Shown piece by piece: positions 9,177-45,723 of a stretch of 64,000 nucleotides of DNA (position 1 is its first letter; each line of letters begins with the position of its first letter). Source of the stretch: Octopus bimaculoides (taxonomy: Eukaryota); NCBI RefSeq assembly GCF_001194135.2, contig NC_068994.1, positions 59,306,641-59,370,640 of the forward strand, read 5' to 3'. Below the pieces are notes generated by a model. That model ran no database searches. It was not told where the DNA came from and was given only the letters and a program-made list of their open reading frames with translations. The translations under genes and the position numbers were made by a program.

Positions 9177-12100
9177 TCAAGGAATTTCTTGAACATGTAT
9201 AGTCTGTACTGGAATCTCAGGTGAAGTTGCGGCTATCAACCTGTGCTCTACATGGCCATTTCTTTGATGTCCGTATTCAAATTTTATTCGTAATTCTCCA
9301 ATGTGAGATTTTGGTAGAATGTCAGGAATCCATTCAATGATAAAAGGAGTAGGATCTTTCTGGTCCACACTAGTGTTACCTGAAGAACAAAATAAAATCA
9401 TCAGGTGTTTGTGTGCTCTTCAAGTTGTACAATCAACACAACGGAAATCTAAAATGTGTAAAAGGTAAATGTTTGTGTGAGAGTAAAGCCGATTTCTTAA
9501 TTTCAATCTAATTTTTTCTTTTTATTTTATTTGTTTCAGTCATTAGACTGTGGCCATGCTGGGGTACTGCCTTGAAAAACTTTTGGCCAGATGAATTGAC
9601 CTCAGTACTTGTTCTTATTTTATCGGCACCACTAAAGTTATTGGAACATAAACGCACCAACACCAGCTGTCAAGTGGTGGTGGGGACAAACACATACAAA
9701 TATATATATATATATAAATAATTTTAATTAGAGGTTAAAATAGCCTCATTAAGGGATAAAAATATCCAATGAATTACTGGTTCATTGCCTATTATTTTTT
9801 TGTGAATAGTGATATTCCTAAAATAGCATGTCTAAGTATAAATCTTGGTTAATAAATATTAAAATTCAGAAAATGGAGATGTAGCATTAATATAATTTAT
9901 TAACTGCAAAAATCCAACATGTATATATTTATTTATGACAGGCTTCTTTCAGTTTCCATCTATCAAATACACTCACAGGGGTTTGGTTAGCCTGAGACTA
10001 TAGTAGAAAAGACTTGCCAAAGGTGTCTCACAGTGGGACTGAACCTGGAACCATGTGCTTGGGAGACAAACTTCTTACCACTCAGCCACTCCGAATTCCT
10101 ATTGCATTTTAAATTTGACAAAGACTTTCAAGCTGACCCCTCCACTATTTCCTTAACATAAAATATTGCAAAACTCTAGTAAAATCAATTTCCACTGGTG
10201 CTAGCAGTGATAGTTATACTTATTTTATTATCATTCAAAAAAAAAAAAAAAAAAAAATCTAATGAAATTTATTCCTGGTAAGATTTTTCCAAAATCTCAA
10301 AACTTACCAACTTTTAAAAAAGTTTTCAACTCAAATGGCCGGATTGGTGTTTGATGTTTGCTTTTATAAGTGTCATCAATGCTTTCAACTTGTACTTTGG
10401 GGACTTCATATAAATCATATGTCCCGTCACGATTTTCAACAAAGTTCCGAGTAATTTCTAATGGCATCTACAAAATGAAAAAGAAAATTTTTAATTTATT
10501 ATCCATGTGACTTCTACTTAAAAGGTTTCGTTTTCTTTTTTTTTTTGTCTTTTACAATTTCAGCAAACAAACTGTATCCATGCCATCAATATATTTTCCA
10601 TTTTTTTTAACCCATTAGCATTCAAATTACTCAATCAAATCTTATGCTTATCTATTCATATTGCTTTAAATTAATCATGCATTATCTCGCAGCATCAAGA
10701 TTTTGATGTAATTGTTTATTTGTAGAATAACATTGTAGGGAAGGTTTGAGGCCAGATCTAGCTGGTTTGAACATATTTATGCTGCAGGGTTAAATATAAA
10801 ATCATATGTCAAAATTTGTTTATTTTAATCTTATATAAAATGAATAAACTCAATAAAATAAACACTTGAAACAGCATTGAATTTAAAAACCCATATTTAA
10901 CATATCTGCCAGTGAAAGGCATGATGCTGTGGCTTTTGTGTGAGAGAAAATCTTTTCACAGACAAGTTGTGTTAAAAATAAAATATATATATCAGAGCAA
11001 GGCAAACATCATCTGAGGAGTGACACACGAGAACATTAGGACATATTTCAGCCTAATTGAATCTTGTCAATAATATTGTGTCTCTATGAAGAGATATTCT
11101 CTCAGACAAAAACTACAGCATCATACCTTTCAATGGTGTATATATGTTAAGTATGATACACAGGTGACTATTTTAATTAAACTAATTTTAGCTAATTTAT
11201 AAGATAAGAGTAAGTCACCACAAATTAGTTTAAGAAAGATAATTAGTTTGTTTAGGTTTCCTAATTAGTGGACAAATGAATCATTTACAATGATGAGAAA
11301 AGTTTCCCAATTACATGATTAGCCTCTACATGGTCATTTCATCTTCTAGAAAGAGCAGTCAAATTGCCCACAAATCACATCCTACAGTTTCAAAAGAAGA
11401 AAACGAGAGAGTGTGTCCAGTGTATTCTCTCTATGTCTAAATAAAAGAAGGGATGGTCACAGCTGGATCGCTTCGATCTCTCAAATCATAGCTGATCTGA
11501 GGCTCAACAATATAAGGTGCACAGAAATAGAAACAATATTTGCTTTCTTGTCCTCCTCTACAGCAAGTCATTCACTTACGTCTGACGTGTCAAATATTTG
11601 TTTCACTTGTAAAATATTGGTGATGTGCCACGTATATTTAGTAAACATTCCGAGAGGAAGAGCATCCTTGCGGACAAAGCCTGTTGTATAGTTTGGTAAA
11701 CGCTTTTTCTTGTTTCCAGAAGAGATTCTTTGCTGTAAACAATCAAAGAATGCCTGAGGTGCATGGAATACTAATGGTTCAGGGCTGCCTGGAAAAACAA
11801 CAGAAAATACTACAGTGAATAAATTTATACAGAATTAACTTTATAAGTAAACACAAGGGTCTAGAATTGGAGGGGGGGAGAAACAAAGTATAATTGATCA
11901 AACTGACCCCAGTTGGAGCAGGGACCAGAATCAGGAGTCAAGACAGAATATAATCAAGCAATCATATTCCTCCACCCCCACCCCTTCAGTTGACCATTAT
12001 TTTATTTCCTTAGGAAGGATGAAAGTCAAAGTCGGCCTTGACAGAATTTAAACATAAAAAGATGCAACTGAAAGGTAGTTTGTGTGGTGCTCTACCGATT

Positions 12101-15100
12101 TTGTCAATCATTGCCCTAATTTATAAAACAATTTTTAATACAGACATGAAGGTTTCAAATTTAGGGGATGTAGACCAACTGGTATCTTATGAAAGCAAAG
12201 TTCTCTTTGTTAGGATTCAAACTGAAAGGGTGTACAAATACGGAAATACCAAGAGATATTTTGTCTGGTGCTCAACCAATTCTAATTGAGAAAATGGTGA
12301 TAATGAGAACGTTTGCTCTTTCAACACAAAAACCTCAAGTTCTAAATAAGCACAACAACAAAGAATACAAACAAACAAAAAAAAAAGAGTGTCTCACCTT
12401 CAAACTGATAATGCATTGTTTGGTTAATTCTCTCTGTCACACTACCTAACCATTGATGGAATGTCACAGCTACAGAATTTTCATCAAGTGGAACTGTAAC
12501 TGGGAAGATAAGAAATTTGACAGAGATGATCTCATAGAATATAGTCAAAGCAAGAATTTCAAAAATAGCCACAGAATATAGAAACAGATAGAGCAATGGA
12601 GAATCATCGTTTTAAAATCTAGTTTTGCATGGGTCAGACAAGAATAAGTTGGGGCAGAGTTTTCTACAGTCAGATGCCCTTCCTGATGCTAATATATACC
12701 AGTCTAGAGAATGAAAACAACCCAGACAACGTTACACAAGAAACTGGAAATGAATGACACCTGTTGAATGAGTTCTTGATTTACAAAGATTGCACAACAT
12801 GCCAAGGATGCTGGACATAGGGGTGGATATTAAAGATCTGAACACAACAATGCAGGACTGTGTAGTGTGGAAAGGGATTGTCAATGGAGTTCTAACCAAC
12901 CATAGGTTGGTCAAAGGATGATGATGATTATGTGTACCTGTGTGTGTTGCTGAAGACACGTACACACACACACGTATATATGTATGCATGCAATCATGTA
13001 CGAGTTTCATGGTGTAACAAACCAAAACAGTAGAATTCCAATCCAAAACTTCATCATTAACAAACACAGATCTGCTAACCTCTTCATATTGTACTTACAG
13101 CTTAATTTACTATAAACAGGATAATATAAGAGAAAAGATATTCTATATCAGCAACAAGATGCAAGAAAGATATCAACTTGAATGAATTCAAAGACAATCA
13201 CCAATTAATTTTCCTGACTTTTTTGGTGGTGTACTTGATTTTGTTGGTTGTTGAATGGGTGTCGTTTGTTTGACTGGACTGGACTTGCGAGTCTCAATTC
13301 CTCCATCTTGTAATGTTAACAATGCGCTACTTGCTTGAACTGGAATAATAAAAATCAAGGAAAAATATAGAAAGTCACATTCGAAATTGTTGGTGTGAGC
13401 TTGTCCAACTGTAACAAGAAACTAAATACAAAGGACATTGGTAGCCACTCTTATGCATCATACCCACTTTATTCCCTCTGTACTACTTATGCTCTCCAAC
13501 CTCTGTTCCCTGTGGGTAGGCCCCAATAAATCTCCAACACCTGCTCTCTCTCTCTCCTTCTATCTCACATGGCACACAGCCACTTCCCTCGGTTCCACTC
13601 CCTCGCTCAGCTGAGAGTCTTGCAAGCTACTTGGTGACTCCACTGGTGCTGGTTCCACATAAAACAGCACCCAGTCCACACTCTGTAAAGTGGTTGGCAT
13701 AAGGAAGGGCATCCAGCCGTAGAAACCAGACCAAAATAGAGAATTGAAGCCTGGTGCAGCTCTCTGGCTTGCTGGTTCCTGTCAAACTGACCAACCCATG
13801 CCAGCATGAAAAACAGACAATAAATGATAATGATGAACTAAAGACAGGACACAACTTATGATGGTTGTGGAGGGACTTATTAAAAGATGTAGAGGTGTTG
13901 GGGTTATAGCAAGAGATAGGGACTAGGAACAGATATAGGAGCAATACTCCATTATGGGTCTCCCCTGGACCTTGTAGAATATCAGCAGCTGTAGGAGTCT
14001 GAAATATCTCTGGGCCCTAAAAAAAAAAAAAAAAAGGTTCGGCTAGTCTTTAGAATGTTGTCCTAGCTATATTTAGAATATATTTTTGCCAGGAGGAAAT
14101 TTACAGCAATTGTGAGGGTTCTAGTCGAGTGTCATTCATGCTTAGAGAGAGTGCTGAGCTGTGGTGTTTCTTGAAATGAGTAGCACTTGAGTTTTTATTT
14201 TGATCTTTTATAATAATCATCACATCAACTTAATTTGAGGAAATTAATGGAGAAACAGAGGAATAAAAAAAACAAAGATGTATACAAGCTCACCAAGCAT
14301 GTCATCCTTGCGTAGCTTTTTAGCTGCCGGCCCTAATAAATGTTCCCCAGTGACAACTACTTCTAATGTGGTGGTATCACTTGGTGTAATACTGTTCTCA
14401 GTTGATGGTTGGTAAATTGTGATCAAATTATCTGCTGCAGGAGCTGGGGACAAACAACAACAAAATGTTAACTTTATCAAAAACAAATCACCACTCCCAT
14501 ACATAAAATTAATATTGATATAATAACAAACAAATCATCATCCCTTATATTTTCATAAGCTACACTCTTTATTCATACACACACACTGTAGACATTTGCA
14601 TCGAATATAGTATAGTAAAGCACAGCCCAAACATAACAATCAATCTGTTCAATAAATAAATTTATATCCCTACTTAATAAAGCCCCAATAATTAAACTGA
14701 ATAAAATCCAGCTAAAAAAGGAAATCCATACAACACTGTATTTGAAATATTAACATTGATAGTAAAAGGTAAATCATATCCAACCCCTTTAATATCTTGA
14801 ATACCCTAAGCCCCTTACTCTCACATAAAGAACAGGAAAGCTTTAAATATAGCACGACTATAGGGATGAAATAAAGACAGATTAAGTAAGTCTATTCCCA
14901 ACGACGATATCACCACTCCGAATTGCCTCAAAGTAGATAAGGCAATAATCTGTTTTTAAATCCTACTCATAAATAGCACAAACCCCAATGTGAAAAGAGT
15001 TATAATAGTGGAGTACTTTTAGCACTTGTACATCTTTCACTGGCACTCCGTCGGTTATGACGACAAGGGTTCAAGTTGATCCGACCAATGGAACAGCTTG

Positions 15101-25024: not shown

Positions 25025-26404
25025 ATGTTCTCCGAACGATTGCACCGTAAACATTTGTCTGTATCCAAGCAGTTTATCACGTCATGCCTTGCTGCCTTCT
25101 TCGGACCTTTCTCGTTTGGTTACATCCTCGGATATAGTTCTCCTGCCATCGCTGAATTACTCAAGAGCAAGTTCTTACACGAGCAACAAGCTGCATGGTT
25201 TGGTTCTATGGTAACGATCGGAGCCATGCTGGGTGGACCCATGGCTGGGTGGTTGGTCGAGAAATACGGACGCAAATACACAATGAATTTCATATCAGTA
25301 CCGTTAATTGTTGGTTGGTGCCTCATCATGGCCACTCCTAACGTTGTATTATTCTATTTGAGCCGCATTGTTAGTGGTGTAGCAATCGGAATGACTTGTG
25401 TTGCCTCACCTATTTATATCGCTGAAATTTCAACCCGATCTCTACGTGGAATGCTTGGCTCCAGTGTTCAGCTCAGTATCACAGTTGGCATTTTTGTGGC
25501 ATATATCCTAGGAATGTATATGAATTATTTACAAATGGCTAAGTTCGGAATCCTTATTCCATTGCTTTCCTTCTTTTTTACGTTATCAATGCCGGAAACC
25601 CCTCGCTGGTTACTGTACAAGGGCCGCCGAATCGAAGCCATCCAAGCACTGACTAAACTTCGATCTGTCAACTGCGACGTCGAGGACGAAATCCGTGATA
25701 TTGAAGAAGGATTAGACATACAAGATATATCCTACAGAGACATGTGGAGAAAACCAGAACTTTCCAGACCAATCTTTATTTCCTTAAGTCTAATGATTCT
25801 GCAACAACTGACTGGTATTAATGCCGTTCTCTTTTATGCTGTTCCAATATTTAAAGAATCTGGTTATGAAAACCAAAGTTATTTTGCAAGTGCCATTATT
25901 GGAGCCACACAGATCCTATTTACATTCCTTGTTTCCCAAATAATGGATCGTGTTGGACGTCGTAAATTATTAATCAGTGGAGGATTGAGTCTAAGCTTTT
26001 CTTGTTTTATCCTCGGATCTTACTACGCTTTGAAAGAACACAATTATCTTGTAGCGAATAATTTGAAGACTCTTCCTCTAATCAGTTTAGTTGTGTTTAT
26101 TGCAAGTTTTTCCATTGGATGGGGGCCAATTCCAATGCTTATTATGTCCGAGATTTTCCCATCTCATGCTCGAGGCAAAGCTAGTGCCCTTTCAATATTT
26201 ACCAGTTGGTTGTTTGCATTTATAGTCACCAAAGAATTTATTACAGTGAAAGAAAGCTTGGGACCAGCAGAAACATTCTGGTTGTTTTCCCTTTTTTCTT
26301 TTACTGGGGTTTTTTTCGTGTGGTTTGTGTTACCCGAAACAAAAGGGAAATCTCTTGAGGAAATTGAATTATATTTCCTCGGTAGAAGTATGCTAAAAAA
26401 ATAG
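25025..26404 (+). CDS. SLC2A8: MFS sugar porter, GLUT8/GLUT6 (SLC2A8-like) / Tret1-like facilitated transporter, intronless CDS, 459 aa
   Basis: Uninterrupted ORF (stop-free frame 24974-26404, first ATG 25025) with many hydrophobic, TM-like segments. Sugar-porter motifs: GYILGYSSP, EKYGRK, YIAEIS..RGMLGS, PETPRWL, QQLTGIN, DRVGRR, GWGPIP..MSEIFP, LPETKGKSLEEI. Strong poly-T acceptor ends at AG 24941-24942. Confidence 0.92.
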   Translation: MFSERLHRKHLSVSKQFITSCLAAFFGPFSFGYILGYSSPAIAELLKSKFLHEQQAAWFGSMVTIGAMLGGPMAGWLVEKYGRKYTMNFISVPLIVGWCLIMATPNVVLFYLSRIVSGVAIGMTCVASPIYIAEISTRSLRGMLGSSVQLSITVGIFVAYILGMYMNYLQMAKFGILIPLLSFFFTLSMPETPRWLLYKGRRIEAIQALTKLRSVNCDVEDEIRDIEEGLDIQDISYRDMWRKPELSRPIFISLSLMILQQLTGINAVLFYAVPIFKESGYENQSYFASAIIGATQILFTFLVSQIMDRVGRRKLLISGGLSLSFSCFILGSYYALKEHNYLVANNLKTLPLISLVVFIASFSIGWGPIPMLIMSEIFPSHARGKASALSIFTSWLFAFIVTKEFITVKESLGPAETFWLFSLFSFTGVFFVWFVLPETKGKSLEEIELYFLGRSMLKK

Positions 26405-32836: not shown

Positions 32837-33409
32837 GGATCTTTTTTAAAATGGGGGCCACATTTTTCATTAACGAAACACTTTGAAACTTGGAACACTG
32901 GTAGAATGTGTCATATAAAACATCTTTTTCTCTTAGTCTTCTTTAAAAAAAAAAGAAATCCATAAGTTATTCCATGTTAAAGTTGTCGTATTTCTGTAAT
33001 TTCAACCAATCACTGACGTCCATTCAGCCGATATACATTAAGTGCCGACTACATAAACAAACGATTCTGAAACAATTAACCTTAACCCTAACCCTAACCN
33101 NNNNNNNNNTAGTGTTAAAGCAAATTTAAAATGAAAAAAAGCAAATAAAACGAAGGTATGGAGATTAAATACGCTTTACATCGCTTAATCAGCCAAAGGA
33201 GTAAATATAAACAACTGAATACTTGTCAGTGATTGGGTGAAATTATCGAAATAAGACAATTTTTTACATGAAATAAATTCGAATACAAAAATATTTTTCT
33301 GTTCTATAACACAAAATAGATAAGTATACGAAGTTTGAAAATCTTTCCGTACCAAAAACACTACGTAAAACATTAATGAAAAATGTGGCCCCCGTTTTAA
33401 AATAGATCC
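32837..33409. mobile_element. Non-autonomous DNA transposon (Merlin-like MITE) with about 37-bp TIRs, perfect 8-bp TSD and internal (TAACCC)n
   Basis: Left TIR ggatcttttttaaaatgggggccacatttttcattaa; right end ttaatgaaaaatgtggcccccgttttaaaatagatcc. TSD cattgact at 32829-32836 and 33410-33417. Contains a 10-N gap at 33100-33109. Confidence 0.8.
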
Positions 33410-33936: not shown

Positions 33937-36900
33937 ATGTCACATTTCTACGTTCTTTTACTGTTTCCACTTTATTTACAAGTTTTTGGCTATCATGAAA
34001 TATCTGATTCGAATTCTACACAATCTCTCACGATTGCGGTGCTTGTTTATCCTGACATTGTTTTACAGAATATTTCATCACGATTCCTTTCCGTTACAAT
34101 TGACACAGACACTCTGAAGAACAACTGGCAATATCTGAATACCAGGTAGTTTTATTTTCATATATAATAACATTCTGACATGTTTACCCGGCGCGGCTCG
34201 GGGTTAAAATGGCATTGTCTTTTTTGTTTACTCTTTTACTTGTTTCAGTCATTTGACTGCGGCCATGCTGGAGCACCGCCTTTAGTTTGGAACAAATCGA
34301 CCCCAGGACTTATTCTATCGGTCTTTTTTGTCGAACCGCTAGGTTACGGGGACGTAAACACACCAGCATCGGTTGTCAAGCGATGGTGGGCGGACAAACA
34401 CAGACACACAAACACACACACATATATATATATATACATTTACATATATACGACGGGCTTTTTTCAGTTTCCGTCTACCAAATCCACTCACAAGGCTTTG
34501 GTTGGCCCGAGGCTGTAGGAGAAGACACTTGCCCAAGGTGCTACGCAGTGGGACTGAACCCATGTGGTTGGTAAGCAAGCTACTTTATTTCATTAACGAT
34601 TTGCCATGAAGGCATTACAAAGAGGGGACGATCAAGGAAAGACAGACAGACATAAAGTAACTGCGGGCTGGACACAGACATTAATGGGATGAAAGGGATA
34701 ACAAAAATGATGAAATAATAATGGGAGGGGCACCGGCGCCCGCCGACCGATAACCCCTCGAAAACATTGTTCGATAAGTTCAAATAGTGTTCAATCAATA
34801 AATCAAAAAAATTTTTAAAGTTCAATTTATCATCTTCATCCGGGCCACCAAGCAAGCTTCTTACCACACAGTCGCTCCTGCGCCTATACTTATTCCATTT
34901 TTTTTTCCAAGTTCAAAATTGTTTTCACTTTGTTAATCGTTTTACAAAATCAAACTAGAAAACTGGACAAAACAGCACAATTGAAAAAAGGGAAAGACTC
35001 CCCACCCCCACCCCGCCTCATTTTCTCCCAAATTTGTTTATTTAATTTTTTTTTTTTTTTGCCAAAAACCTCCGTTTTCGGATATGGAAGTTCCGGAAAA
35101 TTGCCAAAAAATGGCATTGTTAAATTCCTCGCCCTGCCCTAATTCTTAAATTTTGACTTTTTCCCCCAACCCTAACCCTAACCCTAACCCCATGACCGTA
35201 ACCGTAACTACAGAAATATTTTGAAATTTTTGTCAGAATCGTAATCTCCGTATTTTTCCGCATATTTAGAAGAAAAAAAGAAGTAAAAAATGAAGGAAAT
35301 GCGTGTGGGGGTAGGAATTTAAAAATGGTGATTTTTACTAAATGTTTTCCTATTTTCTAGTTCTACCAAAGTACAAACTTTGGCTTGTGGGCTGTCCCCT
35401 GTATATCTGAGGATTGGTGGAACTTTAGAAGACTTTCTCTATTTTCATGATGATTCCAGTGCCTTAGAAAACGTGAACAACCACTTGAAGCCATTTAATA
35501 TAACTGGTAGGATATCTTTTATTTGTTTCAGTTATTAGATTGTGGCCATACTGGGGCACTGCCTGATATATTATTGATATGTATTGATGAATATAGTGAG
35601 GATTGAAAGCAGTGTCATGGCTGAACACTTCGTTTATTTTTTATGTTTTAAGAGTTAAAGCAGGTCTCACGATCATTTTTAGTGGGCAGGAATGTGGGGG
35701 AAATTATTCTCAGACTGGACCTTTGGCCGGAAACCCCTGCTACAGAGTGGGTTTTGTTTAAAGTTTATTGTTCTAATAATATTAATTCCTTACAAAGGAA
35801 TTATTGTTGATAGGGACACATAGCGGGTACATAATGGTTTTAAATTGGGAATTTATAAAGATTTGACATGTGTTTAGACAAAATAGTTATTCTAGTTATT
35901 CAATGATTTCCTTATATTCATTAACAATTCATGTTTTATTTATCTATTTTATTTGTTGATTTGAATTTAAATGTAATTTGTTTATTAACTGTTTCTCTTA
36001 TATTTAGGCCATCAGATTGATGAACTCTTTAAGTTTACCAATTCTGTCCACTGGGATGTTGTTTTTGGTTTGAATATGTTGAATCGGCAACATGGTAAAT
36101 GGAACGCTGATAATGCAGTGAGACTGCTTCAGTATATTGCTAAGAAAGGCTACCCTGTCGCTGCCCTTGAATTGGGAAATGGTGAGTTACTTCAACCATA
36201 TAGTAGTGTCATTTTGCAGTTCAAAGTATTCCTTATGAAACAGACAGACTCTAAAAGATGTAGGGAAATAAACATCATCATGATCGTTATAATCCTTTGA
36301 TGCCTGTTTTTCATGCTGGCATGGGTTCTATAGCTGGATACCCTTCGTAACACCAACCACTTTGTGCCACCAGCACTCGTGAGGTCATCAAGTGATTTGT
36401 AAGACAAGAAAAGAGAAGGGAAAAGCCCCTCCCTCATCCCCCACCCTCCACTTGAATAAGTGGGAGAAGTACTCAAGAGGTGGGATAAGTGAAAATATGA
36501 AAGTGAGACAAGCACAGGTGCTGCCTTACTATGCAGGAGATACACGGTTACCCCAACATTATATAAGAGTAGGTGGGAAGAAGAAAGAAGATGTTAGTGA
36601 TGGGGTGCCAGAGTAAAGCCTCAAGGAACAAAGAGGTGGACGTAAGAGAGGATAGAAACAGTGTATTAGGGAGTGGGGTATAAGAGTGTGAAGTGGGGAT
36701 TAACATGGTTAGAGATGGGGGTGGAGGTGACTGTAGTGAGATGGAAGTGTGACTTGATGGGAAATATGAGGGGAACGGGTTGGAGTAAGGTGAGGGAGAT
36801 AGAAGTGGGTCAGGGATGACAGATCAGGAAGTAGGGGACGATGAGCAAAGGTACATAAGAGAGAAAGGGAACCAATGCGGTGCTTTTGTTAATTTGAACT

Positions 36901-39900
36901 GAAGAACATGAAGAGGAGGTTTTCATTCATGGTTTCATCATCATCGTTTAACGTCTGCTTTCCATGCTAGCATGGGTTGGACGGTTTGACTGAGGGCTGG
37001 CAAGCCGGAATGCTGCACCAGGCACCAATCTGATCTGGCAGAGTTTCTACAGTTGGATGCTTAAAAAAAAGATATATCTGAAACTGTTAATGTTGAGCTC
37101 CAGATTGGTCCCCAAAAAAGAGAACAAAACACACCTATCACTAAAGGCCTTCCAGCCATGCCTTGTCCATCATTTGATACATCCTGGATTACATTATTCA
37201 ATCTGCTCTTTTTTTTCTTGAAATGGTAGGTGCAATTTAGGATAGGTTTGGCTGCTAATATCAGCAGGTCAAACATCTGCATGGCAGCTCTCTCGGCTCA
37301 TATTTGAAACTAATTTCTGTGCTTTTAGCCATTTAAATTCAGATATGAAATAGAAAACTCGAAATATCTGTTTAATTATATCATTAACAAAAAATAATCC
37401 TATGTTTTGCAGAACCAGATGTCTACCAACTGATTCTGCCTCACAGACCAGATCCAACGGTCTTAGCAAGTGATGTTTCATATCTTCGTTCTATCATGGA
37501 TCAGATACCACATTTAAAGGGGACGAAACTGCTGGGGCCTGATGTCACTAATCAATGTGTTACTCAACCGTCATATAAAAATTTCTTTAAAAAGTAAGTT
37601 TTTTTGATAAAATTCTGTTAGATTTTTAAGATTATTTTACAGATTTAATCTTTCATCTTTTACTTGTTTCATTCATTAGACTGTGGCCATACTGGGGCAC
37701 CGCCTTGAAGAATTTTTAGTTGAATAAATTGACCACAGGACTTGTTTTTTAAAAGCCTAATATTTATTCTATTGGTCCCTTTTGCTGAATCGCTAGGTCC
37801 TGAAGATGTAAATTCATGAACACTAGTTATCAAGCAGTGGGCAGGTAGACAAACACATACACACACACACAATACGCTTCTTTCAGTTACTGTCTAACAA
37901 CTCCATTCACAAGGCTTCGGTTGACCTGAGGCTATTAATTAAAAGACACTTGCTCAAGGTGCCATGCAGGGGGACTGAACCCAGAACCATGTGTTTGGGA
38001 AGCAAACTTCTTACCACACAGCTACACCTGCACCTTAATGTTATATAGAGTAAAATATGTTGATTATTATTAGAAATGTTACCAGCTAATTTGCATGTAT
38101 CAATTGTTCTTTTAATACAGGTTCACTATCAGTTTTCTGGCAGCCATTGATCTGCTCCTCCCTCTTTTAATTCAGACTTGATTATGTGAGGTACTTAAAA
38201 TTTCCCATGACCATTACTAACGTGCATTCCACAATGAAGCCTTCATGGCACACATTCACTAGTATCGTATCATGAAGGTGGAAACACTTCCCCCTTTAAT
38301 AATATCATGTGGTCATGTGATTGATCAAACTATTGGATGTTGTTATACATCACTGGTTACAGTGCACTTTGCATCATTTTTTAAGCTTTCAAATGATGCT
38401 ACTCAGCAGCTGGCTAGGTAACCAGCCTAATCGGAAGAGGGTCGTCCGTCGCAGGGTTGGCACCCATTTACAGCCGAGTGGACTGGAGCACCATGAAGAG
38501 AAGTGTTTTGGCCAAGAGTACAATGCATTGCTTGATCTTGCCCCAGCTGAGCTTTCAATCATTTACTGATCAGATCGGAATCAACTTGCTGCCACACCTT
38601 ATTCCAGATGAATCTAGAAGCAGCATTTATCTTGATAAAATCATATCGCTTCACACTTCACTTTTCACTCTATTCTACACCCCCCCCCAACCTTGAACCT
38701 TTGATAAATAGCAGCTAAATCTCCTTCAAACTACACTCTACTCTTTAAAAAGAGAATCATTTGATAATACAGTCTTAGATACCCTTTACCTGAAAAATAA
38801 AGAGACTGGATTGTCATGTCTGGGATGCCTTTGATTAGTTCTTAGGTCTACCAGATCATGGACGATCTGGGAACTAAACAACATCTGATCCTTTGACCCC
38901 CATCCTCCTGATGGAGAGACATTCTTTTCATTTAATCCAAGCACTGATTATTGGTTTCACGTTTTGGCACAAGGCCAGCAATTTCAGGGGAGGAAGTATG
39001 TTGATTACATCGCCCCCCCCCTTTCGTTACTCAACTGGTACTTATTTTATCAGCCCCATGACAAGCAAGACTGACCTTGGCAGAATTTGAACTGAGAATG
39101 TAAAATTGGAAGACACGCCTCTAAGCATTTTACTCGGTCTGCTAATGACTGTGCCAGTTTACCAAACTGTAATTCTTGCAATCGCAACAACAAAAAATGG
39201 TCATTTCATCTCCAGCAATGCCACCTTTTGTTAAAAATACTGTCAAAATTGTAAATGAATTGAATTCCTCAAACATATTTTGTTTTATTCTTTTTTGTTT
39301 TTTATTTGACAGATACCTGGATGCAGCCCACACTTTCTTGGATGCTGTTACCCTACATCAGTATGTTATTGAACTTGTCTTATATTCTTAGCATTTTAAG
39401 GTCTGTAATTTCATGGATGGATGATATTTGGATTATGCACGATGACGATATATTTATATCATTTAATGTACTCGGTATTTAATTAAGAGCTTCTAATAAT
39501 TTCTAACCATTAAGACTTGTGGTTATCCAGGATCTATAATGGGCCTTGTGTCTCCAAGCAACATTTGGGCTTTGAACTCATGGGTTGTTCTATTTGAAAA
39601 TTATGATGCAAATACATGAGAAACGACAAAAGACGAGGAGAAGGTAAATGCAAAAGAGTTGAATTAGAAGAAAGAGGTGGGGGGTGAAATCAGAAAAAAG
39701 AAGGGAAAGAAAATGAGAGTTACGTCCCCTTTGACTGTAGACTTAAAACCCAGTAAAACCTAAAATCAGTTTAGTTGCCCCCTGAAACAGTTTCTTAAAC
39801 ATTCCTGTTTTCTTCCAGATATTATCTTGATGGCAAATATGCCAAACTTTGGGAGTTTTACGATATAGCAGTTATGGACAGGTTGGAAAATGAACTTGCT

Positions 39901-42900
39901 TCAGCCAATGATATTTTGAGAAAGCATGCTCCAGGAAAGAAACTTTGGCTTGGAGAAACCAGTGCAGCCTGGGATTCTGGTTCTGTTAATGTCTCCAATT
40001 CATTTGTGGCTGGATTTTTGTAAGTTATTTTTTAAAGATTTCTGGTAATTCTTTTATTTATTCTCTTTTCATTTTTGGCATTCATTGAAAGCAGTGCTTC
40101 AGCATGGCCTCAGCTCTAACAACTAAAACAGACTAAAGGTATGTCATATAAAAACCAAGTATGGAATCAACAAGAGAATTTTCACATTCTTGTTGAGTCT
40201 GCTAAAAACAATAGCTAATTGTCTCTCATTAGATAATGTTGTCCTGCAAACTTGTAAAACTATGGGATGGTCATGGCTGGAATAACTTTGATCATAGGTC
40301 AGGAATGACCTAATTCTAAACAACAACAACAAGTGGTGCTCAAGCATAGCCACAGCTGAACGGAGAAACAGCTTAATTGGCCGTGTATTGATCGGTTACA
40401 TATATTAAGGCAGTAAGCTGGCAGAATCGTTAGCATGTTGCGCAAATTGTTTAGTGGCATTTCACGTGTTTGTATGTTCAGAGTTCAAATTCTGCTAAGG
40501 TTGAATTTGCCTTTCATCTTTTTGGGATCAATAAAATGAGTACCGGTTGTGTACTGGGATAAATGTAATTGACCTTCCGTACTCCCCCGAAGTTGCTGGC
40601 CTTGTGTCAAAATTTGAAATCAATATTTCATATATTATTAGACATTGAATAAATTATATGGGAATCATTTTCTGTCTTTCTGAAGTACAAATCTCATTGA
40701 TTTTATTCTGCAAGTCACAAAGAGTTGATAATCAAAGAAGTATTGATTATTAATTGTTGAGTTTAATTTCTAAACATTTTATCTTGTAGGTGGTTGGATA
40801 AACTTGGATTAGCTGCTAAATACGGAGTTGAAATTGTGATGAGACAAGACTTCTATGGTGGAAACTATGGACTAATCCAGTTTAAGAATCTGGATCCAAA
40901 CCCAGTAAGTGATTGAAGGAATTAAAACTGACAGTCCACTGGTTACGACAATGAGGGTTCCAGTTGATCTGATCAACGGAACAATCTGCTCATGAAATTA
41001 ACATTCAAATGGCTGAGTGCTCTACTGAAATATGTTACTCTTAGCGTGTTTCTCAGGGAGATTTAGAATGACACAGAGTGCAACGAAGCTGACCCTTTGA
41101 CATATGAATACAACTCATTTTTGCCAGTTGAATGGACTGGAGCAAGATGAAATAGAGTGTCTTACTCAAGGGCACAAGACACTGCTTGGTATCGAATTCA
41201 TGACCTTGTGGTTGTAAGCTGGACACTTTGACCACTTGGCCACATATGCCAACATTGTATTTAAAACAATGTCTTCATGGCATATCTATCAATTGTTATG
41301 GCTGGTGTCTGACTGTTGTCCGCATCAATTTTTTCAGACAATTTGAGCCTTACAAGTCAACTGATGGACTTGTGTAGTTGTCAAATAGTAACAAAGACAT
41401 TGAAAGAGGCCACTCAAAAGTCCTTCAAGATGATAGGAAAACAATTTGGACCCAAATAAAAGAGTAGGGTGGAAGTGGATTGTGACCAGTGAGGAATCAG
41501 GACATCTAATTCCTACAATGTCATCCCTTTGTTATTTCTGCAATGTTACTCTATGTTCACTGTTGTATCTCTTTTTTGTTTTGAGATTTCCTGAAATTTT
41601 TATTTTAAATTTAAAAGAAAATGAAGTTTATAATATTTTAGGTCAATAAATTTCTAGATACAGGCACCAATACTATTCAACAGTTTTACTGACTTCAACC
41701 GAGTGAAATCGTAGTCATGGCTGATGCTAGTGCCATCTGATTGGCACCCATGCTGGTGTCATGTAAAAAAGCACCCTTCGAGCGTTGGGCCTCACGGAGG
41801 CAGTAACAGGTGTCCAAGACCCTTGGCAATATACCATGCTTGTGTTGACCTGCCAAGCCAAGCGAGACCATAGCTGTGGCCGATGCCAGTGTCAGATCAA
41901 TGGCACTAGTGCCGGTAGCACATAAAAAATACCCACTACGCGCTTGGAGTGGTTGGCGTTAGGAAGGGCATCCAGCCATAAAAACCTTGCCAAATCAGAC
42001 TGGAACCTGGTGCAGCCCCCTGGCTTACCAGTTTTCAGTCAAACCGTCCAACCCATACCAGCATGGAAAGCAGACGTTAAATGATGATGATGATGAATTT
42101 GAAGTAAACTGTGGACCACTTCGTAACTCTTGAGTGATAATGTTAGTGTTTTGGTATTTCTGAGATGAAATGATGGGCAAGAAAGAGTTTAACCAAAGAG
42201 CTGAGGAGAAAAGAAGACCTTCTTGAAATGAGAAGTTTGAAAGGAATACACAAGATGTTAAGGATAATACATGGCTTGAGTGAGGGGATTTGAAGTGTAC
42301 CACCGAAAGCCTGATCATTGCTGCACAAGACCAGGCTCTTGTTACCAATTCAATGAAGTATAACATCTATAAAACTTCTGATACCCAGAAATGCAGACTC
42401 TGTTGAAAGAGTGTGGAAAATGTGACCCACTTGGTAAGTGGATGTGAGAGCCTTGCACAAAAAAAATACAAGCGCCACCACGATAAAGTGTGTGTGTATT
42501 TTCATTGGCTCTTATGCCGTAAATACCAATATGAAATAACGGAGAACTGGTATGAGAATGTACCAAGTATAGTTATGCAGGAGGATGGAAAAGTAACGAT
42601 ACTCTGGGACTATGATTTTCAGACGGATCGTGTAATCAAACACTGTCGGACGGATATTGTCATATTGAATAAGAGAGACAAGTACTGTCAGATGCAGGTT
42701 CAAAATTTAAAATACACAGAAATTCAAAATTTTAGCTGGAATATTCTGTGTTCCTTTCTAAACAAAATGACATCAATTTTCACTACTCAATAATGATGAT
42801 GATAATAATAATAATAATAATAATAATAATAGTAATAATAATAAAGTTTGGTATATTCATCATCATCATCATCATCATCGTTATAATTGTTAAGGCCATA

Positions 42901-45723
42901 AAAGACTGAATATTTCTTCTTTTTAAGGATTATTGGTTGAGTCTCTTGTTCAAGACATTGGTTGGTGGCCCAGTTTTTGAAACTGTTGCCTTAGATCCTA
43001 CAAAACATTTCAGAGTTTATACACATTGTACCAACTTACAAAGGTAATCTCACTTTCTTTTATCTTTTTGTTTTTAACCCTTTTTTCCTTACAATAAAAA
43101 TGGGATGATCACAACAGTAGCTCCCATGCTTTGGCACAAACTGTCAGAGAAACAACTAATAACAATATATGAATGACTATATTTTCTCAACTGAATAGAT
43201 TTAAGGAACTGTAGATCAGTGGAAAGAAGAAAAAAAAAAGAAGAAACATAAGAATCCATTTAAAAGAGTGAAGATGTCTTTGAGAAGAAATGTTTTCACT
43301 TCATGGTAAAACTTTATTAAAAGCCAATATTTGTTACCAGCATTTTGACCAGAACCCCACTGGTCCCCTTTAGACAATGAATTGCAGATATTCAGGCTGC
43401 GCATTGGTCACCTCAATCTCATCAGTGTGGGAGGCTTAGAAATTATTATAAGTGCTGCCCCTTTTTTACTGACTTATAAACTAATGAAAATAATCTCATT
43501 GTGTTTTAATGTCTATCTTTCATGCTGGCATGGGTTGGACAGTCTGACATGATCTGATGGGTCTGAAGACTGCATTCTGCTCCAGTGTCTGCTTTGGCAT
43601 GGTTTCTATCATTCAATGTCCTTCCTAATGCCCACCACTTTATGATTAAGACCCTCTTTAACTGAGTGGGGGCAGCTTAGTGCTACAGGAGGAAAGGTCA
43701 AAGTATAAGAAGGGGCCACAATAGGACAGGTTCCACCTATCCATAAATTATATAATGTATTTACAGTAATCCCTCGACTATTGCGGGAGTTATGTTCCAA
43801 AGCCTCCCACCGAAATAAGTAAAATCTAAAAAAATATAAATACCTATTGGCTGCAGAAACCCGGATACACTGAGGAGTCTGCGATTTAAACTTACATATA
43901 TTAGCCAGAAAAATACTGTTTAGGATTTAGCTTGGTTCCTTTACGTATTGAGTTCAAACTGTACCAGAATCAACTTGGCTTCTCAAGTATCCCCAGCGCT
44001 AATAATACAAAAACTGCTATTGCATTAGAACCACAGCTGACTGTGGTTCTAATGTAACCACAACCACCACAACAACAACAACAACATGTACATTAGAAAA
44101 AGACTTGCAAATAAACCACCTCAATATATGTTTTATTTCCGTAGGACAAAATATGGTCCTGGTGCAATAACCGTTTACTTCCTGAATGTATTTTCAAACA
44201 AAACTGTAGCCATTGATTTTCCTAAATACAGTAACCAAATTGTTCATTTGTACCTGTTGGAACCTGCAGATGAAATGGGTCTCAAGTCAAGGTAAGTGCT
44301 ACACAATTTAATCTTTTCTTGTAGAGTGATAAAGTTGTGGCCTGTATGGTTTATTGAATATTGTTTGATTAGGATATTTCACTCTATCTCACTTTGGCAA
44401 TGAAAGGTAAATTTGGTGAGATTGTGAAGATGTAGGGTCAGAGGCAAGAGATAAGTGGGAAGGGATCCTCAATCAGACTCTTCATATGCAATCCCTGTGG
44501 GTGAGTAATAGTGAGAGCAGGGATGGGCATGGTCGTACTCTGAGCTGAGAAATAGATGAAGTAATTGAGGCAGTCAGAGCATGTGACAGGATAATTAATA
44601 TGAGACTAGTTACAGGCAATTCAGAAGCGATAGCTATTTCTGCATATGCTCGACAGGCAGGGCTCCCAGAACCGAAAGATCGCTTCTTTCAGAATCTTTT
44701 GCACACTACCTCAATGATGACTGACAGTAACCTCATTATTATGGCTTTCGACTTCAATGTACAGTAGCCATCAAAATTAACCGGAAAATTTAAAAGACTA
44801 ATTGGCACGAAATAAAACCATTGCAATGATTCTTTAAATAAAAAGAATTTGTTCAATTCTTTTCTGTTGAACAAAACTGGTTTGTAGTTTCTTCCTTCGT
44901 GCTTTGGTGAAGTAGTTTTGCCTCTTGCCACCTTCACATTATTTCATGGAAATACTTATCAAGTAATTACTGAATTTATAATGAAATGTTCAGATGACAA
45001 CAATATTTGCTGTTTGTGTACATCTTCCTCATTTAACTTTCATCTTCCATGGGTTGGATCCAGTGTGTCAGAGGATTGTATTGTGCTCCACTGTCTGTTT
45101 TGACATGGTTTCTATGGCCAAATGCCCTTTCCAACACCAACCACTTTACAAAGTGTACTGGGGGGGCCTTCTTTCATAACCTTGACACTAGTGAGGTCAC
45201 CAAGTAACTCAGAAGACTAAGATCCCCTTCCACTGAATGGGGCCACCATAGAGAGGGATACAGTTTTGTACTAAGGTGATGAAAGGTTTGGAATATGAAG
45301 GAAAGGGTCCAGAACAAGATTTTGCTATGGAGGAGATACACTGCTACCAGCAATATAGAAAAATGGGATTTAAGAGAGATTTGATTGTTATTTCTAGCAA
45401 GTTAACTTTTAATTACAATTCTATGTTAATGTAAATATTATGAATGAAGTGGGAGGAAAGTTAATTAAGCCCAAAGAGAAATTGAAGAAGCACCTCTGTT
45501 GGTTTATGCTTTCAATGGTTTGACTTGTGTCGATTCTGTTTGAACTTTCAATATTTTATTTTTTAGGAATGTCAAGTTAAATGGAATCCCACTTCACTTA
45601 TTAAATAACAACCAGTTACCTTCTTTGAAGCCGAAACCACAAAAACAACCAGTCCTGATACCACCGTTAACATTTGGCTTTATTGTTCTTCCGAATGCCA
45701 AAGCAAGGCCTTGCTATATATAG
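33937..45723 (+). CDS. HPSE: Heparanase (glycoside hydrolase family 79), 497 aa, signal peptide
   Basis: Exons 33937-34145, 35361-35506, 36008-36181, 37413-37593, 39313-39360, 39819-40019, 40790-40904, 42928-43043, 44145-44291, 45567-45723; total 1494 nt, phases consistent. Motifs: [11 protein letters not shown], acid/base ELGNEP (Glu codon split across exons 3/4), LLGPD, nucleophile [24 protein letters not shown]. Confidence 0.95.
34190..34887 (-). mobile_element. SINE family C (tRNA-like head, internal microsatellite), this copy interrupted by a nested insertion
   Basis: Unit seen on + as tgtttcagtcatttgactgcggccatgctggagcaccgcc...ccactcacaaggctttgg...gacacttgcccaagg...cagtgggactgaacc...ttaccacacag. 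Other copies at approx. 9525-10095, 37665-38035, 54340-54500 (-) and 55252-55575, 61555-61710 (+). Confidence 0.8.
34586..34849 (-). mobile_element. 264-bp nested insertion, probably a 5'-truncated non-LTR retrotransposon 3' end, with 13-bp target-site duplication
   Basis: Flanked by aagcaagctactt (34573-34585) and aagcaagcttctt (34850-34862). The minus strand ends ...ccttcatggcaaatcgttaatgaaata running into the TSD to make AATAAA. Confidence 0.65.
35165..35207. repeat. Short interstitial telomere-type array (AACCCT)n decaying to AACCGT
   Basis: caaccctaaccctaaccctaaccccatgaccgtaaccgtaact in heparanase intron 1. Confidence 0.85.
42150..42790 (+). mobile_element. R4/Dong-clade non-LTR retrotransposon 3' fragment (CCHC knuckle plus start of the restriction-like endonuclease)
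   Basis: Reads [13 protein letters not shown]...[33 protein letters not shown]...[25 protein letters not shown]; abuts an (AAT)n tract at about 42791-42843. Confidence 0.8.
44575..44765 (+). mobile_element. Decayed RTE LINE AP-endonuclease fragment
   Basis: Reads DRIINMRLV...[10 protein letters not shown]...KDRFFQNLL...LIIMAFDFN (cf. ISAYAPQ...GDFN). Confidence 0.6.

What the first reader, a model, noticed from the sequence alone, without database searches (positions are those of the whole stretch)
35430..36025. Heparanase lacking most of the proteolytic activation linker
Seen: joining exon 2 to exon 3 (phase 1/1) leaves only 23 residues ([23 protein letters not shown]) between DFLYF and IDELF. 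Known: human HPSE has about 65 residues here, including the Ser110-Gln157 linker removed by cathepsin L. In GH79 enzymes this loop governs access to the cleft and the exo- versus endo-glucuronidase mode. Inference: this enzyme may be a single-chain, activation-independent form, or have shifted specificity, as with leech hyaluronidase or bacterial GH79s. Both catalytic glutamates (NEP, WLGET) are intact.
Basis: partly seen in the sequence, partly recalled or inferred. Interest (0 to 1): 0.7.

Follow-up and report, generated by a model that had tools for sequence, protein, structure and literature searches.

The report
Octopus heparanase with short linker loop
The octopus heparanase gene really does encode only a 23-residue loop where the human enzyme has a 65-residue segment that must be cut out for activation, but this gene is already annotated and loops this short are common in invertebrate heparanases, so the finding is correct but ordinary.

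Summary
Exon 2 (35361-35506) joins exon 3 (36008-36181) in phase 1 and gives [33 protein letters not shown]. My 10-exon, 497-aa model is identical to RefSeq XP_014782571.1, heparanase of Octopus bimaculoides.

No hidden exon was found. The splice sites are conserved in O. sinensis, O. vulgaris and Argonauta. Every intronic candidate of 42 nt or more is broken in O. sinensis. Argonauta's intron shares no similarity. None of the six non-cephalopod invertebrate genes I mapped has a separate linker exon. Mouse has one (126 nt, phase 1/1), most likely from an intron gained inside a long ancestral exon 2.

The short loop is not unusual. Across 124 homologue clusters the median is 35 residues and the commonest bin is 21-25. 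Stony corals, crinoids and a tubeworm have 22-23, abalone 18, a chiton 14. Jawed vertebrates have 64-68.

The loop matches the length of the engineered human GS3 construct, which is constitutively active. A single-chain enzyme that needs no cleavage is therefore the best-supported mechanism, but it is inferred, not shown.

One cephalopod-specific oddity remains: the glucuronate-binding loop reads WDSG instead of YGGG, so substrate specificity is open.

It is a known kind of enzyme and of low interest.

The parts
33937..34145 (+). Coding exon 1. Start codon, hydrophobic signal-like N-terminus [18 protein letters not shown], first beta-strand and FLSVTID with Asp55 (human Asp62 equivalent).
   Evidence: The translation is identical to RefSeq XP_014782571.1.
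35361..35506 (+). Coding exon 2 (146 nt, phase 2 in, phase 1 out). Encodes ...[13 protein letters not shown] plus the first 20 loop residues, [20 protein letters not shown]. The N116-I-T sequon lies at its 3' end.
   Evidence: The donor AATATAACTG|GTAGGA is conserved in O. sinensis and O. vulgaris, and Argonauta has AATGTAACAG|GTAAGA.
35446..35506 (+). Exon-2 part of the 23-residue loop (residues 99-118 plus the first base of Gly119). Positionally this is HDDSS (the human DPKKE equivalent), ALENVN (6 residues standing in for the 48-residue human linker), then NHLKPFNIT.
   Evidence: AlphaFold2 gives mean pLDDT 65 for residues 101-110 and a strand at 115-118. The first 12 residues are 3/12 identical to Argonauta and the last 11 are 8/11 identical.
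35507..36007 (+). Intron 2 (501 nt, 31% GC), with no hidden linker exon. It begins with a truncated SINE-like fragment (~35520-35565).
   Evidence: There are 39 mechanical AG..GT phase-1/1 open candidates. Only 8 remain intact in O. sinensis and all of those are 39 nt or shorter. There is no blastn or tblastx similarity to the Argonauta intron. One-base indels interrupt the long candidates.
36008..36181 (+). Coding exon 3 (174 nt, phase 1 in and out). Encodes G119-HQ, helix IDELFKF..., FGLN and ...ELGN plus the first base of the catalytic Glu177 codon. It is the homologue of the 174-nt mouse exon 4.
37413..37593 (+). Coding exon 4. Completes Glu177 (acid/base, NEP) and holds the region aligned to human heparin-binding domain 2, here [14 protein letters not shown] with two basic residues.
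39313..39360 (+). Coding exon 5 (48 nt), [16 protein letters not shown].
39819..40019 (+). Coding exon 6. Holds Tyr254, WLGET with the nucleophile Glu299 (39946-39960), and the cephalopod-specific WDSG (39970-39981) where the family consensus is x-GGG.
40790..40904 (+). Coding exon 7, WLDKLGL...MRQ(339)...GNY(346).
42928..43043 (+). Coding exon 8, DYWLSLLFK...HCTNLQ.
44145..44291 (+). Coding exon 9 (beta-sandwich domain).
45567..45723 (+). Coding exon 10, ending ...NAKARPCYI and the stop codon.

Best explanation
This is the annotated heparanase gene (glycoside hydrolase family GH79) of Octopus bimaculoides. It has 10 coding exons on the + strand and encodes 497 aa. [quoted passage not shown] In octopus it is 23 residues: 5 that correspond to the C-terminal end of the human 8-kDa subunit, about 6 that stand in for the linker, and 12 that correspond to the N-terminus of the 50-kDa subunit. 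The most likely mechanism is this. The protein is secreted or sent to lysosomes via its signal peptide. It folds as one chain into the (beta/alpha)8 barrel plus beta-sandwich. Its substrate cleft is already open because there is no helical lid, so it works as a retaining endo-beta-glucuronidase (acid/base Glu177, nucleophile Glu299) without cathepsin-L-type activation. Shown here: the gene model, the loop length, the absence of a further conserved exon, conservation of the catalytic pair and most -1 subsite residues, and a confident heparanase fold. Inferred: the open cleft, activity without cleavage, endo-acting mode and the substrate. The short loop is a common condition among invertebrate homologues, not a special loss. 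The region is encoded at the variable 3' end of exon 2 in all bilaterian invertebrates examined. The vertebrate linker is a long version that also acquired an extra phase-1 intron.
For: Gene model and junction. The model is an exact match to RefSeq XP_014782571.1, and the O. vulgaris and O. sinensis orthologues are also 497 aa with the same segment.

Splice sites are conserved in four cephalopods. No conserved intronic exon was found.

Gene structures: exon 2 is 119 nt in chiton, 131 in abalone, 143 in crinoid, 146 in cephalopods, 182 in mussel and 236 in amphioxus. Mouse has 146+126. The same phase-1 boundary lies three residues before the helix in all of them.

Loop lengths: median 35 over 124 clusters, 26 clusters at 23 or fewer, with values by taxon and names.

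Family assignment: Pfam Glyco_hydro_79n E 1.2e-11 on the 193-aa part. Human proheparanase scores 294 bits in two stretches and leech hyaluronidase 238 bits in one stretch.

Structure: AlphaFold2 mean pLDDT 94.4 and pTM 0.92, with only residues 101-110 of the loop at pLDDT 65. Foldseek gives TM 0.88 to 5la4, 0.84 to 7eyo, and rmsd 1.6 A to the mature 50-kDa subunit.

Residues conserved: D55, T91, N176, E177, Y254, E299, Q339, Y346.

Literature: human heparanase with a GSGSGS peptide in place of the linker is catalytically and constitutively active (PMC4847616; PMC11633225). The linker of proheparanase and the corresponding loop of the exo-acting Acidobacterium GH79 occlude the cleft (PMC9500389; PMC12406646).
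Against: No enzyme assay or transcript reads are available here. The AlphaFold2 coordinates could not be inspected, so an open cleft is inferred from loop length alone.

Residues 349-350 of the glucuronate carboxylate-binding loop are Asp-Ser instead of Gly-Gly. Gly350 is described as absolutely conserved in PMC9500389, so activity or substrate could differ.

Most basic residues of heparin-binding domains 1 and 2, and Lys231/Lys232, are absent. Heparan sulfate is therefore not assured as the substrate.

Short species-specific micro-exons (39 nt or less) in intron 2 cannot be formally excluded.

A second GH79 gene is reported for this species (PMC7560691 Table 1) and was not examined.
Confidence: 0.72

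Rival explanations
1. The gene model misses a linker-coding exon. A phase-1/1 cassette lies inside 35507-36007, as in mammals, and the real protein has a long, cleavable linker.
For: Mouse Hpse has exactly such an exon (126 nt, phase 1/1, 42 aa) between the homologues of octopus exons 2 and 3, and 65-23 = 42. The intron holds 39 mechanical open AG..GT candidates. One of them (35653-35769) contains [12 protein letters not shown], faintly like human KLRLEWPYQEQ.
Against: Every candidate of 42 nt or more loses a splice site, shifts frame or gains stops in O. sinensis, including 35653-35769 (115 nt, 2 stops). The Argonauta intron (399 nt) shows no blastn or tblastx similarity. Three independent annotations give 497 aa and Argonauta gives the same 23-residue loop. 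No invertebrate gene examined has a separate linker exon. The conserved N-x-T sequon sits at the end of exon 2 in invertebrates and at the end of mouse exon 3, so mouse exons 2+3 together correspond to invertebrate exon 2. The model folds with pLDDT 94.
Confidence: 0.03
2. The enzyme is single-chain and active but is not a heparan-sulfate endoglucuronidase. The short loop, the WDSG loop and the loss of the basic heparin-binding clusters mark a shift to another glucuronide substrate, such as hyaluronan (as in leech hyaluronoglucuronidase), low-sulfated or unsulfated glycosaminoglycan, or exo-glucuronidase activity.
For: The alignment to leech hyaluronidase 7eyo runs in one uninterrupted stretch (residues 33-495, 238 bits) with structural TM 0.84-0.86. 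Human YGGG (348-351) is WDSG in cephalopods only. R272, R273, K274, K231, K232, K158, K159 and K161 have no basic counterparts. RefSeq names short-loop abalone paralogues 'hyaluronoglucuronidase-like'. Subsites -2 and +1 are known to be poorly conserved among GH79 enzymes with different specificities (PMC9500389).
Against: The sequence is closer to human heparanase (294 bits, 38-40% identity over the 50-kDa part) than to the leech enzyme (238 bits, 32%). The nearest relatives are mollusc 'heparanase' genes with the canonical GGG. Loop length does not correlate with core net charge across 108 homologues (rho 0.16, p 0.10). The neighbour-joining tree does not resolve subfamilies. Backbone amides, not side chains, bind the carboxylate, so Asp-Ser may be tolerated (my inference).
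Confidence: 0.2
3. The protein is catalytically dead or non-enzymatic (a heparanase-2-like binding protein), and the short loop is irrelevant to activation.
For: The Gly350 position described as absolutely conserved is Ser, and 349 is Asp.
Against: Both catalytic glutamates and N176, Y254, Q339, Y346, D55 and T91 are conserved. The WDSG loop is itself conserved between Octopus and Argonauta at 70% overall identity. Catalytic Glu residues are invariant in 121 of 124 clusters, including this one.
Confidence: 0.05

Closest known systems
Human/mammalian heparanase HPSE (GH79; PDB 5E8M mature, 5LA4 pro-form)
   Same: Same fold: TM 0.88 to 5la4 and rmsd 1.6 A to the 50-kDa subunit, with 38-40% identity. 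Same catalytic pair, most -1 subsite residues and a signal peptide. Intron positions are shared: phase 2 before SSxK, phase 1 three residues before helix 2, and phase 1 inside the catalytic Glu codon. The 174-, 48-, 201(94+107)-, 115- and 147-nt exons are homologous.
   Different: The loop is 23 residues against 65. There is no helical lid, no Tyr156/Gln157-type cathepsin L site and no extra 126-nt exon. The basic residues of heparin-binding domains 1 and 2 are mostly missing. YGGG is replaced by WDSG.
Engineered single-chain human heparanase GS3 (Nardella et al. 2004, as described in PMC4847616 and PMC11633225)
   Same: Same topology and the same connection length. GS3 has DPKKE + GSGSGS + (Q)KKFKNSTYSRSS, which is 23-24 residues between the same anchors. 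Octopus has HDDSS + ALENVN + [12 protein letters not shown], which is 23. GS3 is constitutively active without cleavage.
   Different: GS3 is an artificial construct on the human scaffold. The octopus loop is natural, carries an N-glycosylation sequon and has not been assayed.
Leech hyaluronoglucuronidase LHyal (GH79; PDB 7EYO)
   Same: It is a single-chain invertebrate GH79. It aligns with the octopus protein in one continuous stretch (238 bits) with TM 0.84-0.86.
   Different: Sequence similarity is lower than to HPSE (32% identity). The leech enzyme cleaves the beta-1,3 bond of hyaluronan (PMC12254123). No evidence here assigns that specificity to octopus. I could not retrieve the leech sequence for a residue-by-residue comparison.
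Short-loop invertebrate heparanase-like proteins (stony corals, crinoids, Ridgeia, Solemya, Haliotis, Liolophura)
   Same: Loops are 14-23 residues and are encoded at the 3' end of exon 2, with the same gene architecture and both catalytic Glu residues.
   Different: These proteins are 29-43% identical to the octopus one. Most keep x-GGG or have other variants of that loop. None appears to have been characterised biochemically in the papers I could search.
Bacterial GH79 enzymes (Burkholderia BpHep 5BWI, Acidobacterium AcGH79 3VNY)
   Same: They are single-chain GH79 enzymes with a TIM barrel plus beta-sandwich, TM 0.72-0.75. In them the equivalent loop decides exo versus endo mode (PMC9500389; PMC4847616).
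   Different: Identity is only 16-18%. AcGH79 has a 41-residue occluding loop and is exo-acting.

Membership tests
Glycoside hydrolase family 79 (Pfam PF03662 Glyco_hydro_79n) | Significant match to the family profile | tested here: met
   PF03662 scores E 1.2e-11, 44.7 bits against a cut-off of 23.1 on the 193-aa N-terminal part. PF03662 is also precomputed for the whole protein.
Glycoside hydrolase family 79 (Pfam PF03662 Glyco_hydro_79n) | (beta/alpha)8 barrel plus C-terminal beta-sandwich fold | tested here: met
   The AlphaFold2 model has pLDDT 94.4 and pTM 0.92. Its best Foldseek hits are all GH79 structures: 5la4, 7eyo, 5e8m, 5bwi, 3vny.
Glycoside hydrolase family 79 (Pfam PF03662 Glyco_hydro_79n) | Catalytic acid/base Glu in NEP and nucleophile Glu in GET | tested here: met
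   Glu177 and Glu299 align with human Glu225 and Glu343. Both are invariant columns in the 104-sequence alignment.
Metazoan heparanase (HPSE-type endo-beta-glucuronidase) | Closest sequence and gene-structure relationship to HPSE | tested here: met
   The best PDB hit is human proheparanase (1.6e-86). Intron positions and phases are shared with mouse Hpse. Three sources name it heparanase. Orthology to HPSE as opposed to other metazoan GH79 branches is not resolved by the neighbour-joining tree.
Metazoan heparanase (HPSE-type endo-beta-glucuronidase) | -1 subsite residues for glucuronic acid (Asp62, Thr97, Asn224, Tyr298, Gly349, Gly350, Gln383, Tyr391) | tested here: inconclusive
   Six of the eight are conserved (D55, T91, N176, Y254, Q339, Y346). 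Gly349-Gly350 are Asp305-Ser306. PMC9500389 calls Gly350 absolutely conserved.
Metazoan heparanase (HPSE-type endo-beta-glucuronidase) | Basic heparin-binding domains lining the cleft (HBD1 Lys158-Asp171, HBD2 Gln270-Lys280) | tested here: not met
   The HBD1 equivalent [14 protein letters not shown] has one Lys. The HBD2 equivalent [14 protein letters not shown] has two Lys and no Arg. K231 and K232 become L and I. Several other invertebrate homologues are equally poor in basic residues.
Metazoan heparanase (HPSE-type endo-beta-glucuronidase) | Cleavage of heparan sulfate at internal GlcA residues | not testable with these tools
   This needs a recombinant enzyme assay.
Proteolytically activated pro-heparanase (vertebrate type) | A linker of about 48 residues forming a helical lid that is excised by cathepsin L to give 8-kDa and 50-kDa chains | tested here: not met
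   Only about 6 residues (ALENVN) stand where the linker would be. The segment is 23 residues against 64-72 in vertebrates. No helix is predicted in residues 99-114. There is no dibasic or Tyr-Gln site. Actual processing was not tested.
Leech-type hyaluronoglucuronidase (EC 3.2.1.36) | Specific cleavage of the beta-1,3 glucuronidic bond of hyaluronan, and closest relationship to LHyal | tested here: inconclusive
   It resembles 7eyo structurally and in being single-chain. It scores lower against 7eyo than against HPSE. The activity cannot be tested here.

The most novel reading that the evidence does not exclude
Cephalopod heparanase is a naturally constitutive single-chain GH79 whose glucuronate-binding loop was remodelled in this lineage (YGGG to WDSG, conserved from Octopus to Argonauta) and which lacks the basic heparin-binding clusters. 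It would therefore act on a substrate other than highly sulfated heparan sulfate. More broadly, the cleavable linker would be an add-on of the chordate or vertebrate lineage to an ancestrally lid-less enzyme. Some bivalves would have evolved long linkers with furin-type sites independently.
Probability: 0.2. Interest if true: 0.45.

Novelty: already known. Interest (0 to 1): 0.15.

Why it matters
It matters little on its own. The gene and its protein are already in RefSeq and UniProt, and it is established that GH79 enzymes without the linker, and human heparanase with a 6-residue substitute, are active as single chains.

The modest value lies in context. The cathepsin-L-activated zymogen design familiar from human heparanase appears here only in vertebrates, where the linker length is nearly constant. 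Invertebrate homologues vary from 14 to over 1000 residues at this one loop.

A naturally lid-less animal heparanase could be a convenient recombinant reagent, or a comparison point for how latency evolved. The WDSG loop is a small, testable question about substrate recognition.

Tried and rejected
1. The first homologue search, with the 193-aa partial protein, returned nothing. Exact look-up and the exhaustive representative search worked instead.

2. I first read the result as 'octopus lacks exactly one exon', because mouse exon 3 is 126 nt (42 aa), 65-23 = 42, and exon 2 is 146 nt in both species. I rejected this after mapping six more genes. Invertebrate exon 2 varies from 119 to 236 nt. 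The N-x-T sequon and the phase-1 boundary show that mouse exons 2+3 together equal invertebrate exon 2. The equalities are most likely coincidence, and the vertebrate intron is a gain.

3. The intronic candidate 35653-35769 has a faint resemblance to the human linker (LRL-WP). I rejected it because it is frameshifted and stop-containing in O. sinensis.

4. Weak tblastn hits to 'FLWLD' elsewhere in the window (16851, 42020, 53697, 57665) are repeat-derived and do not mark a second GH79 gene.

5. I tested whether loop length correlates with core net charge, as a proxy for heparan sulfate binding. It does not (rho 0.16, p 0.10).

6. A neighbour-joining tree of 19 named sequences did not resolve subfamilies. 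Only the chordate clade (80%) and the cephalopod pair (100%) were supported.

7. I tried to obtain the leech LHyal sequence through PDB alignment output using an annelid query. Human heparanase chains still ranked first.

8. A literature search for the use of the Hirudinaria loop in single-chain heparanase found nothing in the library. That detail of Nardella et al. 2004 rests on my memory only.

9. The profile search with names was dominated by vertebrates. It did not reveal squid or cuttlefish orthologues or the second octopus GH79 gene.

10. Spliced proteins cannot be looked up as window proteins. Two mollusc proteins, from Pecten and Patella, had no genomic record.
Full report
WHAT IS THERE

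The window is cephalopod DNA: AT-rich, with long introns full of SINE-like repeats. On the + strand between 33937 and 45723 lies a GH79 gene with ten coding exons, all with GT-AG boundaries. The exons are 33937-34145, 35361-35506, 36008-36181, 37413-37593, 39313-39360, 39819-40019, 40790-40904, 42928-43043, 44145-44291 and 45567-45723 (confirmed by an exact spliced mapping).

The 497-aa product is letter-for-letter identical to XP_014782571.1/XP_052828847.1, 'heparanase isoform X1 [Octopus bimaculoides]' (UniProt A0A0L8GAZ4). The O. vulgaris and O. sinensis orthologues are also 497 aa. The gene and the exon 2-exon 3 junction are therefore already in public annotation.

THE OBSERVATION

Exon 2 ends AATATAACTG|gtagga at 35506. 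Exon 3 begins ttatatttag|GCCATC at 36008. The Gly119 codon is split G|GC, so the junction is phase 1.

The join gives DFLYF(94-98), [23 protein letters not shown](99-121), IDELF(122-126). Human and mouse heparanase have 65 residues between the same anchors. The HMMER alignment to proheparanase 5la4 breaks exactly here. NEP (Glu177) and WLGET (Glu299) are intact.

IS AN EXON HIDDEN IN THE 501-NT INTRON?

The concern was reasonable. Mouse Hpse has a 126-nt phase-1/1 exon at just this place. Five lines of evidence argue against one in cephalopods.

- The donor and acceptor are conserved in O. sinensis, O. vulgaris and Argonauta hians, and Argonauta (70% identical protein) has the same 23-residue length.
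- The intron holds 39 mechanically possible open AG..GT phase-1/1 intervals. In O. sinensis every one of 42 nt or more has lost a splice site, shifted frame or acquired stops. Only eight intervals of 39 nt or less survive, as expected by chance at about 93% identity.
- The Argonauta intron (399 nt) has no blastn or tblastx similarity to the octopus one.
- Exact spliced maps of Mytilus, Haliotis, Liolophura, Antedon and Branchiostoma genes show no separate linker exon, and Nematostella has this region fused into one exon.
- The model folds with mean pLDDT 94.4 and pTM 0.92.

Tiny species-specific micro-exons cannot be excluded without transcript reads.

HOW THE LENGTH DIFFERENCE AROSE

Three intron positions are shared by all bilaterians examined. 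One is phase 2, before SSxK. One is phase 1, three residues before helix 2. One is phase 1, inside the catalytic Glu codon.

Between the first two lies exon 2. Its length varies: 119 nt in chiton, 131 in abalone, 143 in crinoid, 146 in the four cephalopods, 182 in mussel and 236 in amphioxus. Mouse has 146 + 126 nt with an extra phase-1 intron.

The conserved N-x-T sequon lies at the 3' end of exon 2 in invertebrates (FNIT|, NFTMS|, NFTMI|). In mouse it lies at the 3' end of exon 3 (KNSTYS|). Mouse exons 2+3 together therefore correspond to invertebrate exon 2.

I had first noted that octopus 'lacks exactly one exon' (42 aa, and 146 = 146 nt). The wider sample shows this is most likely coincidence. 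The loop is simply a length-variable 3' part of exon 2, and the mammalian gene has an added intron within a long version of it.

IS A SHORT LOOP UNUSUAL?

It is not. An exhaustive HMMER search found 2738 homologues. Among the 124 top cluster representatives that carry both anchors, the segment has a median of 35 residues. Twenty-six are at 23 or fewer and 51 at 30 or fewer. The most populated bin is 21-25, and only 30 exceed 50.

Lengths by named taxon (names; lengths):

- chiton 14
- abalone 18
- Solemya 21
- four stony corals 22
- crinoids 22-23
- Ridgeia 23
- cephalopods 23
- scorpion 27
- mussels and limpets 35
- insects 39-41
- sea anemones 43-44
- scallops 46-58
- amphioxus 53
- priapulid 63
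- Mercenaria 65
- Mya 82
- jawed vertebrates 64-68
- lamprey 72

The near-constant long linker is thus a vertebrate feature. The octopus value is typical of a widespread short class.

MECHANISM

Positionally, HDDSS corresponds to human DPKKE, the end of the 8-kDa chain. [12 protein letters not shown] corresponds to KKFKNSTYSRSS, the start of the 50-kDa chain. Six residues, ALENVN, are left where human has 48.

That is the same length as the GSGSGS spacer of the engineered human GS3 enzyme. GS3 is described as catalytically active (PMC4847616) and constitutively active (PMC11633225). In proheparanase the linker forms a lid over the cleft. The equivalent 41-residue loop makes Acidobacterium GH79 exo-acting (PMC12406646; PMC9500389; PMC4847616).

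The AlphaFold2 model predicts no helix in residues 99-114. It gives a flexible stretch at 101-110 (pLDDT 65) and a strand at 115-118 pairing with 96-99. The first half of the loop is also the fast-evolving half: 3/12 identical to Argonauta, against 8/11 for the second half. There is no dibasic site.

The best-supported mechanism is therefore a single-chain retaining endo-beta-glucuronidase with a permanently open cleft that needs no activating cleavage. The fold, residues and loop length are shown. The open cleft, activity and endo-acting mode are inferred.

SUBSTRATE

Structurally the model matches human proheparanase (TM 0.88), leech hyaluronidase 7eyo (TM 0.84-0.86) and the mature 50-kDa subunit (rmsd 1.6 A, 38-40% identity). 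By sequence, HPSE scores 294 bits and LHyal 238 bits, the latter in one continuous stretch.

D55, T91, N176, E177, Y254, E299, Q339 and Y346 match the human -1 subsite. Human Y348-G351 (YGGG) is WDSG, a variant seen only in the cephalopod sequences among 124 clusters. PMC9500389 lists Gly350 as absolutely conserved. Most basic residues of HBD1 and HBD2, and K231/K232, are absent.

These features leave room for a different substrate preference, but the hints are weak. Loop length does not correlate with core charge (rho 0.16, p 0.10), and a neighbour-joining tree does not resolve subfamilies. I give the shifted-specificity rival about 0.2.

COMPARISON AND NOVELTY

The locus is a GH79 member by profile, fold and catalytic residues. 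It is nearest to metazoan heparanase by sequence and gene structure. It does not meet the defining feature of the vertebrate zymogen, the excisable helical linker, and it lacks the basic heparin-binding clusters. It works most like the engineered GS3 enzyme and like single-chain invertebrate GH79s such as leech hyaluronidase.

Nothing here is a new kind of system. The protein is annotated, and the principle that a short connection gives an active single chain is established. A molluscan GH survey lists two GH79 genes for O. bimaculoides (PMC7560691 Table 1). The second was not examined.

VERDICT

Interest is low (0.15).

Noticed in passing
window 39970-39981 (residues 304-307): The glucuronate carboxylate-binding loop reads WDSG where the family consensus is x-GGG (human Y348-G351). 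Among 124 homologue clusters this variant occurs only in the cephalopod sequences (Octopus x3, Argonauta). Gly350 is called absolutely conserved in PMC9500389.
   Followed up: partly
window 34383-34570 (inside intron 1): RefSeq isoform X2 (XP_052828848.1, 490 aa) uses an alternative first exon made of a CA/TA microsatellite plus SINE-like repeat ([23 protein letters not shown]...). It lacks the signal peptide and the strand carrying Asp55, so it is probably a non-functional exonised repeat.
   Followed up: partly
window 26000-26401, + strand: This is the last coding exon of an upstream sugar transporter gene (Pfam Sugar_tr PF00083, E 1.7e-26, profile positions 331-450 of 452).
   Followed up: partly
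window ~34230-34590, 35520-35565, 37650-38030: Copies of a SINE-like repeat (core GACTGTGGCCATACTGGGGCACCGCC) lie in introns 1, 2 and 3. The copy in intron 2 is a short fragment starting about 10 nt after the exon-2 donor and is also present in O. sinensis and O. vulgaris. Another repeat family yields spurious 'FLWLD' tblastn hits at 16851, 42020, 53697 and 57665.
   Followed up: partly
window 33080-33097 and 35164-35187; N run near 33100: There are interstitial telomere-like (CCCTAA)n runs, with 0 expected by chance in shuffles, one of them next to an assembly gap.
   Followed up: no
L001 10605-12154 and L003 9336-10885 (O. sinensis / O. vulgaris intron 2): Intron 2 is 1550 nt in these species against 501 nt in O. 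bimaculoides, because of an insertion of about 1067 nt. The whole gene spans about 27 kb there, against 11.8 kb in O. bimaculoides and 6.3 kb in Argonauta.
   Followed up: no
proteins P0292 (Mercenaria), P0233 (Mya), P0012 (unnamed, Logan): Long-linker bivalve homologues carry a furin-type motif inside the linker, about 10-15 residues before the NFTMT sequon (RRRKRD, RRSKRD, KRRNKRD). This suggests independent evolution of proteolytic processing by a different protease class.
   Followed up: no
proteins P0071, P0072, P0094, P0100, P0101: In some homologues the same loop is expanded to 240-1122 residues of Thr/Pro/Lys-rich, mucin-like sequence between the two halves of the barrel. Their organisms were not identified.
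   Followed up: no
proteins P0006 (Batillaria, 1021 aa) and P0185 (Dimorphilus, 920 aa): These proteins contain two GH79 units in one predicted protein. They are either true tandem fusions or merged neighbouring genes.
   Followed up: no
L004 (Mus pahari Hpse) exon 3, locus 11994-12119: The mammalian linker core (DICRSEPVSDDVLRKLQVEWPFQELLLLREQYQKEFKNSTYS) is a symmetric 126-nt phase-1/1 exon. Its skipping would give an in-frame protein with a 23-residue loop, the same length as in octopus. Amphioxus has the 'DIC' motif but no intron there.
   Followed up: partly
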